Assembly (NCBI GenBank): GCA_904063045.1
Contig: CAJFCJ010000020.1
Coordinates: 1,356,916-1,420,915, forward strand
DNA from: Dimorphilus gyrociliatus
Taxonomy: Eukaryota > Animalia > Annelida
Direction: 5' to 3'
DNA length: 64,000 nucleotides
Below are positions 42,348 to 45,604 of the stretch, one piece after another (the first letter of the stretch is position 1; the number at the start of each line of letters is the position of its first letter). The translations under genes and the position numbers were made by a program. Under the pieces are notes generated by a model, which ran no database searches, was not told the DNA's origin, and saw only the letters and a program-made list of their open reading frames with translations.

Positions 42348-43560
42348 TTATAAATTTGCTTGCCATGCACTAGTCAACCAATGTCCACCATCGCAAACCA
42401 AAGTTGCTCCAGTAATGTAGGCTGCAATTTCTGATATTAGAAAGAGCGCACCGTTTGCTATTTCGGTACGTGTTCCTAGACGACCCAATGGAATTTGATT
42501 CAACATCGTATTTAAATATTCAGGATTACCTTTGTACGATTTTAATTTAAAAATAAGATATTAAAAGATAAGTTTTATATATAATCGATATTTACTTAAA
42601 CGTCTTAATCCTTCAGTTCCATCCGTTGCTCCGGGTGCAATTCCAACAACCCTAACATTGGAACTACCCCATTCAACCGACATATGTCTTGTAAGTGCAT
42701 CTTTAAAAAAAAATGTGCGTAAATACTTTAATATGGCAGTATACGTAACTAACCGATAGCAGCTTTAGCTGAACCTGCGTGAGCTTGTAAAGGAGTTCCC
42801 CTATAGTCTAGAGTAGCTGTAATATTTAAGATAACTCCACTTTTCTGTCTCTACAAGTTATTAATAAATAAGTAATTTTAGAAAATGGATAAAATTCAAC
42901 TTTATGAATATATTAACTTGAAAGAAAGTCTCAAAAGCGTATTTGCTACATAAAAATGTACCCATGGTGTCAATTTCTAATACAGTTCTATAAGCATTTG
43001 GCGAAAGACCTGTAATAGGGCTGAGGAAATTTCCAGCAGCGCCTAAAAAGAAGAGTATATTTTAGAATACCGTTCGGAAGGAATTTATTTCAACATCTCA
43101 CAGTTTACTAGAACGTCCAATCTACCAAATTCATTTGCGATTGATTCATATAAATTAACTATATTTTCTGGCTAGATAAGAATAAAGTATTTATAAGAGC
43201 AATAACTAAAGATATGGTCAGTTCTAATTATTCACCTTTCTAACGTCTAGCTGAAGACCTAAACATTTTGCATTTGGTCTCTTTACTTTTGACAATTCTT
43301 CTGCTGCTAGCTGAACCCTTTGCAAATTTCTGCTAGCAATTACAACGTTACATCCGTGCCTTAGGAAGATTTCGGCAATTGAGAATCCTATGCCGGATCC
43401 CCCACCTGTAATAAGGGCAACTTTCCCCCTAAAATATCATGCATTAAAGTTTGAATAAGAATAAGATTATTTGAAAAATTGTGTACTTTATTAAATCTTT
43501 ATCAAAGAAATAGCGGTAGTTTTCCGAACATTTTTCGTTAAAACTATTTGATTTTTGCAT
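42348..43560 (-). CDS. DECR2: Peroxisomal 2,4-dienoyl-CoA reductase (SDR family); multi-exon
   Basis: Manual translation: YRYFFDKDL|..[46 protein letters not shown] and [10 protein letters not shown]. Absent from the ORF track. Confidence 0.9.
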
Positions 43561-43630
43561 TTTCGTCTATACGTACTTGAACTCTGCTAGTATTAGGCTA
43601 TGTCATATTAATAACTATGAGAAGACACAC

Positions 43631-43640
43631 AGATGGCGTT
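43631..43640 (+). promoter_or_regulatory. AGATGGCGTT motif in the DECR2-homeobox divergent promoter
   Basis: Exact copy of the motif at 24365 and 40682. Confidence 0.5.
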
Positions 43641-43772
43641 AAAAACAGACTTAGCGGTAACGTTTAGCGGTTCAAAAAGAGTTAACTTTATTATTGTATT
43701 TGCACGCGAGACAAGCGAATCACTCATATTTATCAAATCTAATTGTACAACTGTTGGTGTCGCCTGGTGATC

Positions 43773-44128
43773 ATGCGTGCAAAAACTACAATTAACTTTA
43801 GTATAGACAGTATTTTGAGTGGTATGTATTGGCCTTTAATATAATCCTTTTTATTCTAAATTCTGATAGGTGCTATATGTTAAGGAAGAAGATCCAGAAT
43901 TCAGTTCAACCAGTGGCAAATAGCAGATTTAGAACGAGTTTTCCTCTTTACGCACTATCCAAATATATTTTTAAGGGGTGAACTCGCAGTGAGGCTGAAC
44001 ATATCAGAAAATCGAATTCAGGCAATTTAAATAACATTCAAATTCTATAGAAAAATAAAAGCACATCGTATTTTCAGATTTGGTTTCAGAATAGGAGGGC
44101 CAAGTGGCGAAAAGAACAACGCCGATAA
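43773..44128 (+). CDS. Minimal PRD-class Q50 homeobox protein with N-terminal eh1 motif (about 78 aa)
   Basis: Exons 43773-43821, 43885-44021 and 44078-44128 give MRAKTTINFSIDSILS-GRRSRIQFNQWQIADLERVFLFTHYPNIFLRGELAVRLNISENRIQ|IWFQNRRAKWRKEQRR*. Confidence 0.8.
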
Positions 44129-44169
44129 CGAGTAAACTATTCAACTATCGTACATGAGACGAATTTTTT

Positions 44170-45604
44170 CTAGTAGTTGTCGACTTTTCTGCATATTTCG
44201 TCCGTGAATTCCGAACATTTTGCTGAACCTCCTAAATCACCAGTCAATTTTTGTCCTTCCTTGATAGTTTCAAATACAGCTCTTTCTATACGATCAGCAT
44301 GTTCATAAAATTCCATGTAGCGCAACATCATGACGGCCGAGAGTAAGAGAGCAGTTGGGTTGGCCTTGTCTTGCCCGGCGATGTCTGGAGCAGTACCATG
44401 TACAGATTCCTATATAAAATCATTAGAAAAGACTCGATAAAGAACCATGATATTTATCTTAAGTTATGCACACTTACAAAAATAGCTCCCTGTTCTCCAA
44501 TATTTCCGGAAGGAGTTACCTGTGCACGAAGAACAGATAAGATTTGATTGTCAACGAAAACTAAATTAGACGGTCAACACTTACGCCTAAGCCGCCGATA
44601 AGACCAGCGCACAAATCTGATAATATATCTCCATACAAGTTGGGCATAACAAGAACGTCGAAATGAGTCGGATCGCGCACCATGTTTAAGCATACAGTAT
44701 CCAAATACATTTCTTTGAATGTTATGTCCCTGTTCTTCTCAGCTGCTTGACGGCAACATTTTAAAAATAAGCCATCAGACATTCTCATAATATTTGCCTT
44801 GTGAACGGCTGTAACAGTACGGCGATTATTTGCTCTGGCATATTTGAAAGCGAACTCTGCAACTCTTCTTGAAGCATTTTCTGTGATCAATTTAATACTT
44901 TGTACAACACCATCAACAATTTCGTGCTCTATTCCACTGTATTCTCCTTCAGTATTCTCTCTAATGGTAACGATATCTACATCTTTGTAAGCAGTTTCGT
45001 AGCCTTCAACACTTTTACATGGTCTTACATTGGCATACAGATTAAATTCTTTTCTCAGAGCTAAATTAAGAGAGCGGTGTCCTTTCCCTACTGGAGTTGC
45101 CAAAGGGCCTTTTAGCCCAACATGATTTTTGTTGACCGAGTCGATTGCATTTTGTGGAATATCAAACTTCCCATCTGGGCCCTTAACAGGAGTCACCTAA
45201 TATACACAGTAGTGATATTAGAGTATTAATATCATAAACAATTACCGGGCCTCACTTACGTCGACTGATTCCCACGTGATAGGAACGCCGGCTGCACCAA
45301 ATATCTGCTTAACCGAATTAGATATTTCTGGTCCAATTCCATCACCAGGAATTAGAGTAACCAGGCGAGATTTGTCGGACATGGATCTCCGACTGCATGC
45401 CGAAGCTGTTGAAACCTATAGCGTGAAGGTCAGAACACATGTTAGTCAGTTCAATTTGGATTAAACGAAAAGAGAGAAGAATGTTTAGGTAATATTAACA
45501 ATAATACTGATTACTGATAATCTTAAACTGATAAAAAAACTATAGGAACAATTACAAAAATAGGAAATATTTACAAGTTTAGAAAAAATTTTCTTAGATA
45601 GCAT
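44170..45604 (-). CDS. IDH3A: NAD-dependent isocitrate dehydrogenase subunit alpha; multi-exon
   Basis: [62 protein letters not shown] and [16 protein letters not shown]. Confidence 0.96.

What the first reader, a model, noticed from the sequence alone, without database searches (positions are those of the whole stretch)
43773..44128. 78-aa homeobox microprotein: eh1 repressor motif fused directly to a PRD-class homeodomain
The predicted product has only FSIDSIL (eh1/octapeptide, Groucho/TLE-binding), a full 60-residue Q50 homeodomain and two more residues. It has no linker and no activation region, so it is a minimal DNA-binding repressor. The homeodomain is divergent (I6, Q7, W11, L21-F22, G32) and by eye resembles the eh1+GRRxR...RIQIWFQNRRAK layout of vertebrate Hesx1/Anf, a family considered vertebrate-specific. 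It may be a novel lineage-specific homeobox gene or a convergent form. It is invisible to the ORF track.
Basis: partly seen in the sequence, partly recalled or inferred. Interest (0 to 1): 0.75.

Follow-up and report, generated by a model that had tools for sequence, protein, structure and literature searches.

The report
Miniature Uncx-type homeobox repressor gene
A real but apparently unannotated 78-residue gene in a tiny marine worm encodes only a co-repressor-docking motif joined directly to a DNA-binding homeodomain, and it looks like an extremely shortened, fast-diverged relative of the Uncx/unc-4 neural patterning genes rather than of vertebrate Hesx1.

Summary
Three short exons (43773-43821, 43885-44021, 44078-44128, + strand) join into a 78-residue product: Met, an eh1 motif (FSIDSIL), two residues, a complete Q50 paired-like homeodomain, then RR and a stop.

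The gene is under strong purifying selection. RNA contigs from a related lineage (L001/L002) carry the same locus. Over 70 codons dN is 0.037 and dS about 1.4 (omega 0.025). Exon 2 differences fall 6/0/21 by codon position. The eh1 motif (FSIDNIL there), both acceptors, the unusual GC donor and the stop codon are all kept.

The Hesx1/Anf reading is not supported. Hesx1 scores 24 bits against 43 for Prrx2. In an exhaustive search almost all best hits are Uncx/unc-4 proteins, at 57-63% homeodomain identity. A maximum-likelihood tree places the gene inside the Uncx clade (99/98, and 97/98 without the diagnostic Trp11). Uncx proteins carry an N-terminal FSIDGILSG-type eh1 and the same three-exon layout.

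The gene lacks every Uncx motif outside the homeodomain. I found no spliced transcript and no annotated product. The locus appears in RNA only unspliced, probably as the antisense 3'UTR of the neighbouring IDH3 gene. I read it as a new, extreme variant of a known family, of moderate interest.

The parts
43773..43821 (+). Exon 1: start codon, MRAKTTINFSIDSILS, and the first base of the Gly17 codon
   Evidence: An in-frame stop lies at 43740 with no AG acceptor before the ATG. A is at position -3 of the ATG. The 3' half of the exon is conserved in L001.
43797..43817 (+). eh1 (Engrailed homology 1, Groucho/TLE-docking) motif FSIDSIL
   Evidence: The related lineage reads FSIDNIL, with three synonymous changes inside the motif. 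It resembles the N-terminal eh1 of Uncx proteins: PFSIDGILSG in amphioxus, PFSVDGILSS in Owenia and Lineus.
43822..43884 (+). Intron 1: 63 nt, GT-AG, phase 1
   Evidence: Donor and acceptor are conserved in L001. The intron differs in length there (64 nt), whereas the exons have no indels. Intron 1 of Lineus Uncx is also phase 1.
43885..44021 (+). Exon 2: homeodomain positions 1-46 (helices 1 and 2 and the start of helix 3)
   Evidence: Pfam Homeodomain 2.7e-10. There are 27 differences from L001, falling 6/0/21 by codon position, and only this frame shows that pattern.
44022..44077 (+). Intron 2: 56 nt, GC-AG, phase 0, between homeodomain residues 46 and 47
   Evidence: The GC donor is conserved in L001/L002. 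The position is the same as in the Lineus Uncx gene, which uses a GT donor.
44078..44128 (+). Exon 3: homeodomain positions 47-60 (IWFQNRRAKWRKEQ), then RR and a TAA stop
   Evidence: The stop and all residues are identical in L001, with one synonymous change.
44078..44160 (.). Unusually conserved block: exon 3 plus 32 nt of 3' flank, including an AGTAAA at 44131-44136 that could be the poly(A) signal
   Evidence: There are 2 differences in 83 nt against L001, although synonymous divergence elsewhere is saturated. It overlaps the 3'UTR of IDH3 on the minus strand (the IDH3 contig reaches 44105). No significant RNA structure was found. The poly(A) role is inferred.

Best explanation
This is a functional, lineage-restricted homeobox gene of a dinophilid-type annelid genome. 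Earlier notes of this scan name the organism as Dimorphilus gyrociliatus.

The gene is most likely derived from the Uncx/unc-4 family by extreme shortening. Only the family's N-terminal eh1 motif and its homeodomain remain, now separated by two residues. All N-terminal, linker and C-terminal sequence is gone.

After a burst of homeodomain change, the protein has been held almost constant. Only 5 of the 70 comparable residues differ between two lineages whose synonymous sites are saturated.

Inferred mechanism: the Q50 paired-like homeodomain binds TAAT-type sites, and the eh1 helix docks into the WD40 domain of Groucho/TLE. The protein would then act as a minimal DNA-bound repressor. Alternatively it could compete with full-length paired-like factors for their sites.

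The gene sits in a 610-bp gap. It is head-to-head with a short-chain dehydrogenase gene, with 212 bp between the two ATGs. It is tail-to-tail with IDH3, whose 3'UTR overlaps it in antisense.
For: Shown:
- The three-exon ORF is intact and has a complete N-terminus.
- The homeodomain is recognised by Pfam and keeps the DNA-contact and core residues R2, R3, R5, L16, F20, Y25, W48, F49, Q50, N51 and R53.
- The orthologous locus in L001/L002 gives dN 0.037 and dS 1.44, omega 0.025. Exon 2 differences fall 6/0/21 by codon position, and no other frame behaves this way.
- Its dN is below that of the neighbouring IDH3 (0.06).
- A 98% identical metatranscriptome contig has 2 exonic differences, both synonymous, against 3 in the 56-nt intron.
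- Uncx/unc-4 dominates the best 150 of 3882 hits (names).
- The tree places the gene in the Uncx clade at 99/98, and at 97/98 with column 11 removed.
- Trp11-Gln12 turned up only in Uncx-labelled entries of a published PRD-class alignment.
- Uncx proteins of annelid, nemertean, amphioxus and vertebrates carry an N-terminal eh1 of the form FS(I/V)DG(I/L)LS(G/S) (PMC1310626).
- The Lineus Uncx gene has the same layout of eh1 exon, homeodomain 1-46 exon and homeodomain 47+ exon, with the same intron phases.

From the literature: eh1 binds Groucho/TLE, and UNC-4 represses through UNC-37/Groucho (PMC1310626; PMC4901127).
Against: - No spliced transcript was seen. Every RNA contig that covers the locus is unspliced there.
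- No 78-aa or other product sharing its words is in the 5.8-billion-cluster protein collection.
- Homeodomain identity to Uncx is only 57-63%, little above other paired-like families at about 55%.
- The tree lacks many PRD families (Hesx, Gsc, Shox, Hbn, Repo, Prop, Pitx, spiralian PRD clades I-VIII), and the gene sits on a long branch.
- The Uncx post-homeodomain motif (NTKKGPGRPAHN...) and the C-terminal eh1 are absent.
- Groucho binding, DNA binding and repression are all inferred.
- With only two residues between eh1 and the DNA-inserting N-terminal arm, simultaneous Groucho and DNA binding might be sterically impossible.
- The start codon and promoter region could not be compared, because L001 ends inside exon 1.
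Confidence: 0.65

Rival explanations
1. The gene is an orphan paired-like homeobox gene that is not derived from Uncx. On this view Trp11 and the eh1 motif are convergent or ancestral PRD-like features, and the tree placement is long-branch or sampling artefact. The function would still be a minimal eh1 + homeodomain repressor.
For: - Identity to Uncx (57-63%) is barely above Arx/Alx/Prrx-like homeodomains (55-57%).
- Bit scores differ by only 2-4 bits.
- It has E33 as in generic paired-like domains, not the A33 of Uncx (alignment).
- It pairs with the long-branched octocoral sequence.
- eh1 occurs N-terminal to many homeodomains (PMC1310626).
- Spiralians have several non-canonical PRD clades (PMC5322547, PMC6118893).
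Against: - The clade with Uncx is starred at 99/98, and at 97/98 without column 11.
- I found W11-Q12 in no non-Uncx entry of the published alignment.
- Substrings typical of this homeodomain match none of the PRD clade I-VIII sequences.
- The eh1 form and the gene structure fit Uncx.
Confidence: 0.2
2. The 78-residue model is only part of a larger gene. Further coding exons would lie beyond the neighbouring genes, or alternative splicing would bypass the stop.
For: - No spliced transcript has been seen, so the exon set is inferred.
- All other Uncx proteins are 200-550 aa.
- Nested genes occur in this genome (notes, unchecked).
Against: - An in-frame stop lies 33 nt upstream of the ATG with no AG acceptor between them.
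- The stop codon and the RR tail are identical in the related lineage, and the one GT inside exon 3 is lost there.
- Opposite-strand genes begin 212 bp upstream (ATG at 43560) and end 42 bp downstream (stop at 44170).
Confidence: 0.08
3. The locus is a non-functional relic. On this view its conservation reflects constraint on the IDH3 3'UTR or read-through transcript, not on a protein.
For: - RNA contigs cover the locus only in unspliced form, joined to spliced IDH3.
- The introns (about 75-80% identical) and the block 44078-44160 are more conserved than synonymous sites.
Against: - UTR constraint cannot produce a 6/0/21 codon-position pattern, omega 0.025 in one frame only, indels confined to the introns, and conserved splice sites and stop.
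Confidence: 0.03
4. The gene is an invertebrate homologue, or a convergent copy, of vertebrate Hesx1/Anf.
For: It has an N-terminal eh1, and GRRxR and RIQIWFQNRRAK strings as in Hesx1.
Against: - The Hesx1 homeodomain scores 24 bits against 43 bits for Prrx2 and 38-39 bits for Phox2b, Alx4 and Aristaless.
- The named sequences among the 150 best hits of 1.84 billion proteins were Uncx/unc-4 or Prrx-like, none Hesx.
- The tree places the gene in Uncx.
Confidence: 0.01

Closest known systems
Uncx / unc-4 family (paired-like, Q50): Uncx4.1 of vertebrates, unc-4 of Drosophila and C. elegans, Uncx A/B of annelids
   Same: - Trp11-Gln12 in the homeodomain.
- 'RL(D/N)(L/I)xE(S/N)R' before helix 3.
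- Tree placement in the family.
- An N-terminal eh1 of the FSIDxILSG type.
- An intron at homeodomain position 46/47 and a phase-1 intron before the homeodomain exon.
- The family represses through Groucho (PMC1310626).
   Different: - 78 aa against 200-550 aa.
- The eh1 abuts the homeodomain instead of lying 45-65 residues upstream.
- There is no NTKKGPGRPAHN post-homeodomain motif, no C-terminal eh1 and no C-terminal tail motif.
- Only 57-63% homeodomain identity, whereas the Owenia, Lineus, chiton and oyster Uncx homeodomains differ by 1-2 residues.
- I6-Q7, A14-D15, G32-E33.
- A GC donor in intron 2.
OdsH (Odysseus), the fast-evolving duplicate of unc-4 in Drosophila
   Same: It is a lineage-restricted Uncx-family derivative with an unusually diverged homeodomain (PMC10917504, listed; not read in detail).
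   Different: OdsH keeps a full-length protein with the C-terminal eh1 (PMC1310626). The gene here is truncated, and since its divergence it has been under strong purifying selection rather than continued rapid change.
Homeodomain-only miniproteins: mouse Hopx (73 aa) and C. elegans CEH-7 (84 aa)
   Same: The protein is barely larger than the homeodomain (PMC4901127).
   Different: The gene here adds a canonical eh1 and keeps all DNA-contact residues. By my own knowledge, Hopx has lost DNA binding, and neither Hopx nor CEH-7 is an Uncx derivative.
Hesx1/Anf
   Same: An eh1 N-terminal to a Q50 paired-like homeodomain, and repressor logic.
   Different: The homeodomain is not specifically similar (24 bits). 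Hesx1 has about 80 residues between eh1 and the homeodomain (my own knowledge).
Non-canonical spiralian PRD clades I-VIII (Paps et al. 2015; Barton-Owen et al. 2018)
   Same: Taxonomically restricted, divergent PRD-class genes of annelids and molluscs.
   Different: None of the sequences in their alignment shares this homeodomain's distinctive strings or Trp11. They were not included in my tree because their sequences could not be imported by reference.

Membership tests
Homeodomain superfamily, PRD-like (paired-like) Q50 group | A 60-residue homeodomain matching the Pfam profile, with Q50 and paired-like best hits | tested here: met
   Pfam PF00046 at 2.7e-10 on exon 2 alone. The best solved-structure hits are Prrx2, Phox2b, Alx4 and Aristaless. 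WFQNRRAKWRK is in exon 3.
PRD/PRD-like class | An intron between homeodomain residues 46 and 47 | tested here: met
   Intron 2 at 44022-44077 lies between Q46 and I47, phase 0. Lineus Uncx has its intron at the same place.
Uncx / unc-4 | Homeodomain groups with Uncx in a phylogeny | tested here: met
   Clade support is 99/98, and 97/98 without column 11. The outgroup was limited to 13-15 other PRD-class sequences.
Uncx / unc-4 | Trp11-Gln12 signature in helix 1 | tested here: met
   W11-Q12 are present. In the PMC6118893 alignment, 'WQL' occurs 17 times, matching the number of Uncx/Unc4 entries, and 'QWQ' occurs only in amphioxus UncxB.
Uncx / unc-4 | High homeodomain identity to other members (bilaterian Uncx domains are about 85-98% alike) | tested here: not met
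   Identity is 57-63%, and the stem branch is long (0.73 changes per site).
Uncx / unc-4 | Conserved post-homeodomain motif NTKKGPGRPAHNAHPQ(S/T)CSGEPI | tested here: not met
   The protein stops two residues after the homeodomain. The motif is present in the mite, insect, annelid, nemertean and fish Uncx sequences that were printed in full.
Uncx / unc-4 | eh1 motif(s): N-terminal in most bilaterians, and C-terminal | tested here: inconclusive
   An N-terminal eh1 is present and similar in form. It is 2 rather than 45-65 residues from the homeodomain, and the C-terminal eh1 is absent. eh1 is also not specific to this family.
Hesx1/Anf | Homeodomain specifically similar to Hesx1 | tested here: not met
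   Hesx1 (2k40) scores 24.1 bits, E 1.9e-4, ranked 16th of 26 PDB hits.
eh1-dependent Groucho/TLE-recruiting repressors | Physical binding of the motif to the Groucho WD40 domain, and repression | not testable with these tools
   The motif matches the FSIDNIL-type core and is conserved under synonymous change. Binding is inferred from the literature.

The most novel reading that the evidence does not exclude
A self-contained 78-residue 'micro-repressor' arose in dinophilid annelids by stripping an Uncx gene down to its eh1 and homeodomain. Because the eh1 helix abuts the DNA-inserting N-terminal arm, Groucho docking and DNA binding would be coupled, either mutually exclusive or obligatorily joint. 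That would be a mode not seen in full-length eh1 homeodomain proteins. Its expression would be gated by complete antisense overlap with the abundant IDH3 mRNA 3'UTR. That overlap would also explain the near-invariant 83-nt block at 44078-44160.
Probability: 0.12. Interest if true: 0.65.

Novelty: new variant of a known kind. Interest (0 to 1): 0.42.

Why it matters
This would be one of the smallest animal homeodomain proteins that still looks able to bind DNA, and it carries a co-repressor docking motif.

- It gives a natural minimal construct for asking what an eh1 plus a homeodomain can do alone.
- It is an example of protein-level miniaturisation in an animal whose genome compaction has been described as conservative (PMC7854359).
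- It seems to be missing from public protein sets, so homeobox inventories of this annelid probably undercount.
- For Uncx biology, it is a second case, after Drosophila OdsH, of a strongly diverged lineage-specific derivative of this otherwise very conservative family.

Tried and rejected
**Searches that found nothing**
- A word-index protein search with exon 2, limited to 25-79 aa proteins.
- The same with the related lineage's read-through ORF P0002, limited to 50-159 aa: only P0002 itself. So no annotated or spliced product was found.
- Exact look-ups of two single-exon neighbours to name the assembly.
- Rfam on the whole window.
- The ESM Atlas: only 'Homeodomain'.
- The supplements of the D. 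gyrociliatus genome paper hold no Uncx or homeobox list.
- No paper links Dimorphilus or Dinophilus with Uncx.
- An exact scan for the conserved exon 3 in metagenome contigs and a back-translated scan with the alignment of the two exon 2 products. One search was a size slip, corrected by giving the alignment.
- Findings look-ups for Uncx, or for its sequence, in this genome.

**Dead ends**
- DNA for the Owenia Uncx locus was not available.
- An annelid-like Logan Uncx contig came from an unrelated run, so I could not tell whether this worm also has a canonical Uncx.
- RNA folding of the conserved 3' block gave no significant structure.
- The bacterial-type promoter/terminator scan is irrelevant here.

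**Left out because there is no reference**
- The spliced 78-residue product exists only as three separate window references, so I did not send it to structure prediction, the exact-sequence look-ups or the family scans. I handled it only inside scripts built from the window file.
- The PRD-class sequences of PMC6118893 could be read but not imported, so they are not in the tree.

Full report
**1. What is in the sequence**

The region between 43560 and 44170 is a 610-bp gap between two minus-strand genes.
- One is a short-chain dehydrogenase whose first coding exon starts at the ATG at 43560.
- The other is the NAD-isocitrate dehydrogenase (IDH3) gene, whose stop codon is at 44170-44172.

On the plus strand this gap holds three short exons:

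| Feature | Coordinates | Content |
|---|---|---|
| Exon 1 | 43773-43821 | MRAKTTINFSIDSILS plus one base |
| Intron 1 | 43822-43884 | 63 nt, GTATGT...AG, phase 1 |
| Exon 2 | 43885-44021 | homeodomain positions 1-46 |
| Intron 2 | 44022-44077 | 56 nt, GC donor, ttttcAG acceptor, phase 0 |
| Exon 3 | 44078-44128 | IWFQNRRAKWRKEQRR, then TAA |

- The joined CDS is 237 nt, giving 78 residues.
- An in-frame TAA lies at 43740. No AG dinucleotide lies between it and the ATG, so no upstream exon can splice in ahead of the eh1 motif.
- Exon 2 alone matches the Pfam Homeodomain profile at 2.7e-10.

**2. Is it a real gene?**

The exhaustive protein search returned P0002, a 91-residue ORF that is 93% identical over exon 2. 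It comes from two Logan RNA contigs, L001 and L002.
- These contigs carry a fully spliced IDH3 coding sequence on the opposite strand.
- Beyond the IDH3 stop they carry the homeobox locus, from the middle of exon 1 onwards.
- They are therefore the orthologous locus of a related lineage.
- IDH3 gives dS about 1.5 and dN 0.06 between the two.

The two versions aligned show these features:
- The exons have no indels, while both introns do.
- Both acceptors, the GT donor, the GC donor and the TAA are kept.
- Over 70 comparable codons there are 27 synonymous and 6 non-synonymous differences, giving dN 0.037, dS 1.44 and omega 0.025.
- In exon 2 the 27 differences fall 6/0/21 on codon positions 1/2/3.
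- None of the other five frames shows such a pattern.
- The eh1 motif reads FSIDNIL in the relative, the textbook form, and three synonymous changes lie inside it.

A third, 98% identical contig from a marine metatranscriptome has two exonic differences, both synonymous, against three in the 56-nt intron. Constraint on an untranslated region cannot produce this pattern. The protein is under strong selection.

**3. Transcript evidence**

This is the weak point.
- In every RNA data set that holds the locus, the locus is unspliced: X3, X2 and L001/L002.
- In X3 and L001/L002 it is joined to spliced minus-strand neighbours.
- An IDH3 contig of X1 reaches 44105, inside exon 3.
- The simplest reading is that these reads come from an extended IDH3 3'UTR, or read-through, running antisense across the homeobox gene.
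- On that reading, the homeobox mRNA itself is too rare to be assembled.
- Word-index searches found no 78-residue or similar product in the collection. The gene therefore seems unannotated, and no spliced mRNA contig is on record.

**4. Which family?**

Against solved structures, the best matches to exon 2 are:

| Protein | Bits |
|---|---|
| Prrx2 | 43 |
| Phox2b | 39 |
| Alx4 | 39 |
| Aristaless | 38 |
| Hesx1 | 24 |

Hesx1 is therefore far down the list, and the Hesx1/Anf idea fails.

In the exhaustive search of 1.84 billion representatives, 3882 proteins pass E 0.001. Nearly all of the best 150 share the string RTNF..WQLEELE...SHYPDVFMREALA.
- Their source names are 'homeobox protein unc-4'.
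- The same string is labelled Uncx in the alignment published with PMC6118893.
- In that alignment 'WQL' occurs 17 times, which equals the number of Uncx plus Unc4 entries. 'QWQ' occurs only in amphioxus UncxB.

The maximum-likelihood tree had 35 homeodomains.
- They were 14 named Uncx, 5 unnamed Trp11 sequences, 14 other PRD-class sequences, and the two versions of this gene.
- It places the gene inside a clade of all Uncx-type sequences at 99/98.
- With two very long rows removed and column 11 deleted, the same clade has 97/98.
- A topology with the gene just outside crown Uncx is not rejected (p-AU 0.19).

Two features outside the homeodomain agree with Uncx descent.
- Uncx proteins of Owenia, Lineus, amphioxus, fish and alligator have an N-terminal eh1 of the form PFS(I/V)DG(I/L)LS(G/S), 45-65 residues before the homeodomain. 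This compares with FSIDSILSG here. PMC1310626 reports the N- and C-terminal motifs for mouse Uncx4.1.
- The Lineus Uncx gene has the same three coding exons: an eh1 exon, a homeodomain 1-46 exon and a homeodomain 47+ exon. It has a phase-1 first intron and a phase-0 intron at 46/47.

**5. What does not fit Uncx**

- Homeodomain identity is only 57-63%. By contrast, annelid, nemertean, chiton and oyster Uncx domains differ from one another by one or two residues.
- The post-homeodomain motif NTKKGPGRPAHN..., the C-terminal eh1 and the tail motif are all absent, because the protein ends two residues after the homeodomain.
- My outgroup sampling is thin. Hesx, Gsc, Shox, Hbn, Repo, Prop, Pitx and the spiralian PRD clades I-VIII were not in the tree.
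- String searches of the published alignment found none of this domain's distinctive segments in those clades.

I therefore call it Uncx-derived with about 0.75 confidence. I would not call it a regular family member.

**6. How it probably works**

What is shown is an intact, selected protein. It has a homeodomain that keeps the core and DNA-contact residues, and a conserved eh1.

What is inferred from established knowledge:
- eh1 motifs form a short helix that docks on the WD40 domain of Groucho/TLE and confer repression. UNC-4 represses through UNC-37/Groucho (PMC4901127; PMC1310626).
- Q50 paired-like homeodomains bind TAAT-core sites, often as dimers on palindromic sites (my own knowledge).

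The most likely role is therefore a minimal DNA-bound Groucho-dependent repressor. A less likely role is a competitor for the sites of full-length paired-like factors.

The two-residue spacing between eh1 and the N-terminal arm is unusual. It raises the untested question of whether Groucho and DNA can be bound at once.

The evolutionary pattern is a very long stem branch followed by near-stasis between two lineages with saturated synonymous divergence. This fits a burst of change when the protein was shortened, followed by a fixed new function.

**7. Novelty**

- Very small homeodomain proteins are known: Hopx at 73 aa and CEH-7 at 84 aa (PMC4901127).
- Lineage-specific divergent PRD genes are known in spiralians.
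- A fast-evolving unc-4 duplicate, OdsH, is known in Drosophila.
- I found no report of an Uncx derivative reduced to eh1 plus homeodomain, and no paper linking Dimorphilus or Dinophilus with Uncx.

I rate it a new variant of a known kind, of moderate interest.

**8. Organism**

I did not verify the organism directly.
- Earlier notes of this scan name the genome as Dimorphilus gyrociliatus (s1-080612) and mention segmented worms.
- The short introns (56-68 nt here) agree with the 66-bp median reported for that species (PMC7854359).

**9. Limits**

- The spliced product has no reference, so it was not sent to structure prediction or exact look-ups.
- The start codon and promoter could not be compared between lineages, because L001 begins inside exon 1.

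Noticed in passing
window 44078-44160: Exon 3 plus 32 nt of 3' flank differ at only 2 of 83 positions from the related lineage. Synonymous sites in exon 2 and in IDH3 are 65-80% different. About 7 synonymous differences would be expected in exon 3, and 1 is seen. The block overlaps the IDH3 3'UTR in antisense and holds an AGTAAA. No significant RNA fold was found.
   Followed up: partly
window 44022-44023; L001 228-229: Intron 2 uses a GC-AG splice pair (CAG|GCAAT), conserved in both lineages. The same intron of Lineus Uncx uses GT.
   Followed up: partly
window 43486-44408; L001 1-387: RNA contigs join spliced IDH3 to the whole homeobox locus in unspliced form. The IDH3 3'UTR or read-through transcript therefore probably runs antisense across the entire homeobox gene. 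The contigs are unstranded, so this is inferred.
   Followed up: partly
window 43428-43560 (minus strand): The upstream neighbour is a short-chain dehydrogenase with a TGGGSGIG motif. Its first coding exon (MQKSNSF...) starts 212 bp from the homeobox ATG, head to head, so the two genes probably share a very short bidirectional promoter region.
   Followed up: no
window 43822-43884 and 44022-44077: Both introns are about 75-80% identical between the lineages. This is clearly more conserved than synonymous sites of the flanking exons.
   Followed up: no
Read-laying run X3, match to window 44079-44112: A second transcript of the same organism matches only the WFQNRRAKWRK-coding 34 nt, with different flanks that read ...LPESRVQV before and EGKAPVQW after. 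This is another Q50 paired-like gene, and it lacks the canonical Uncx tail (table 7).
   Followed up: no
P0151 / L003-L006 (octocoral Paramuricea clavata 'unc-4 homolog'): The cnidarian Uncx-type homeodomain has M6-Q7 and V13, much like I6-Q7 and I13 here, and the two pair in the tree at 82/78. This is probably long-branch attraction or convergence.
   Followed up: partly
P0004, P0008, P0009, P0010, P0012, P0053 (hits): Several top-ranked 'two-stretch' hits are predicted proteins in which the homeodomain 1-46 exon is repeated back to back. This looks like an assembly or gene-model artefact rather than true double homeodomains.
   Followed up: no
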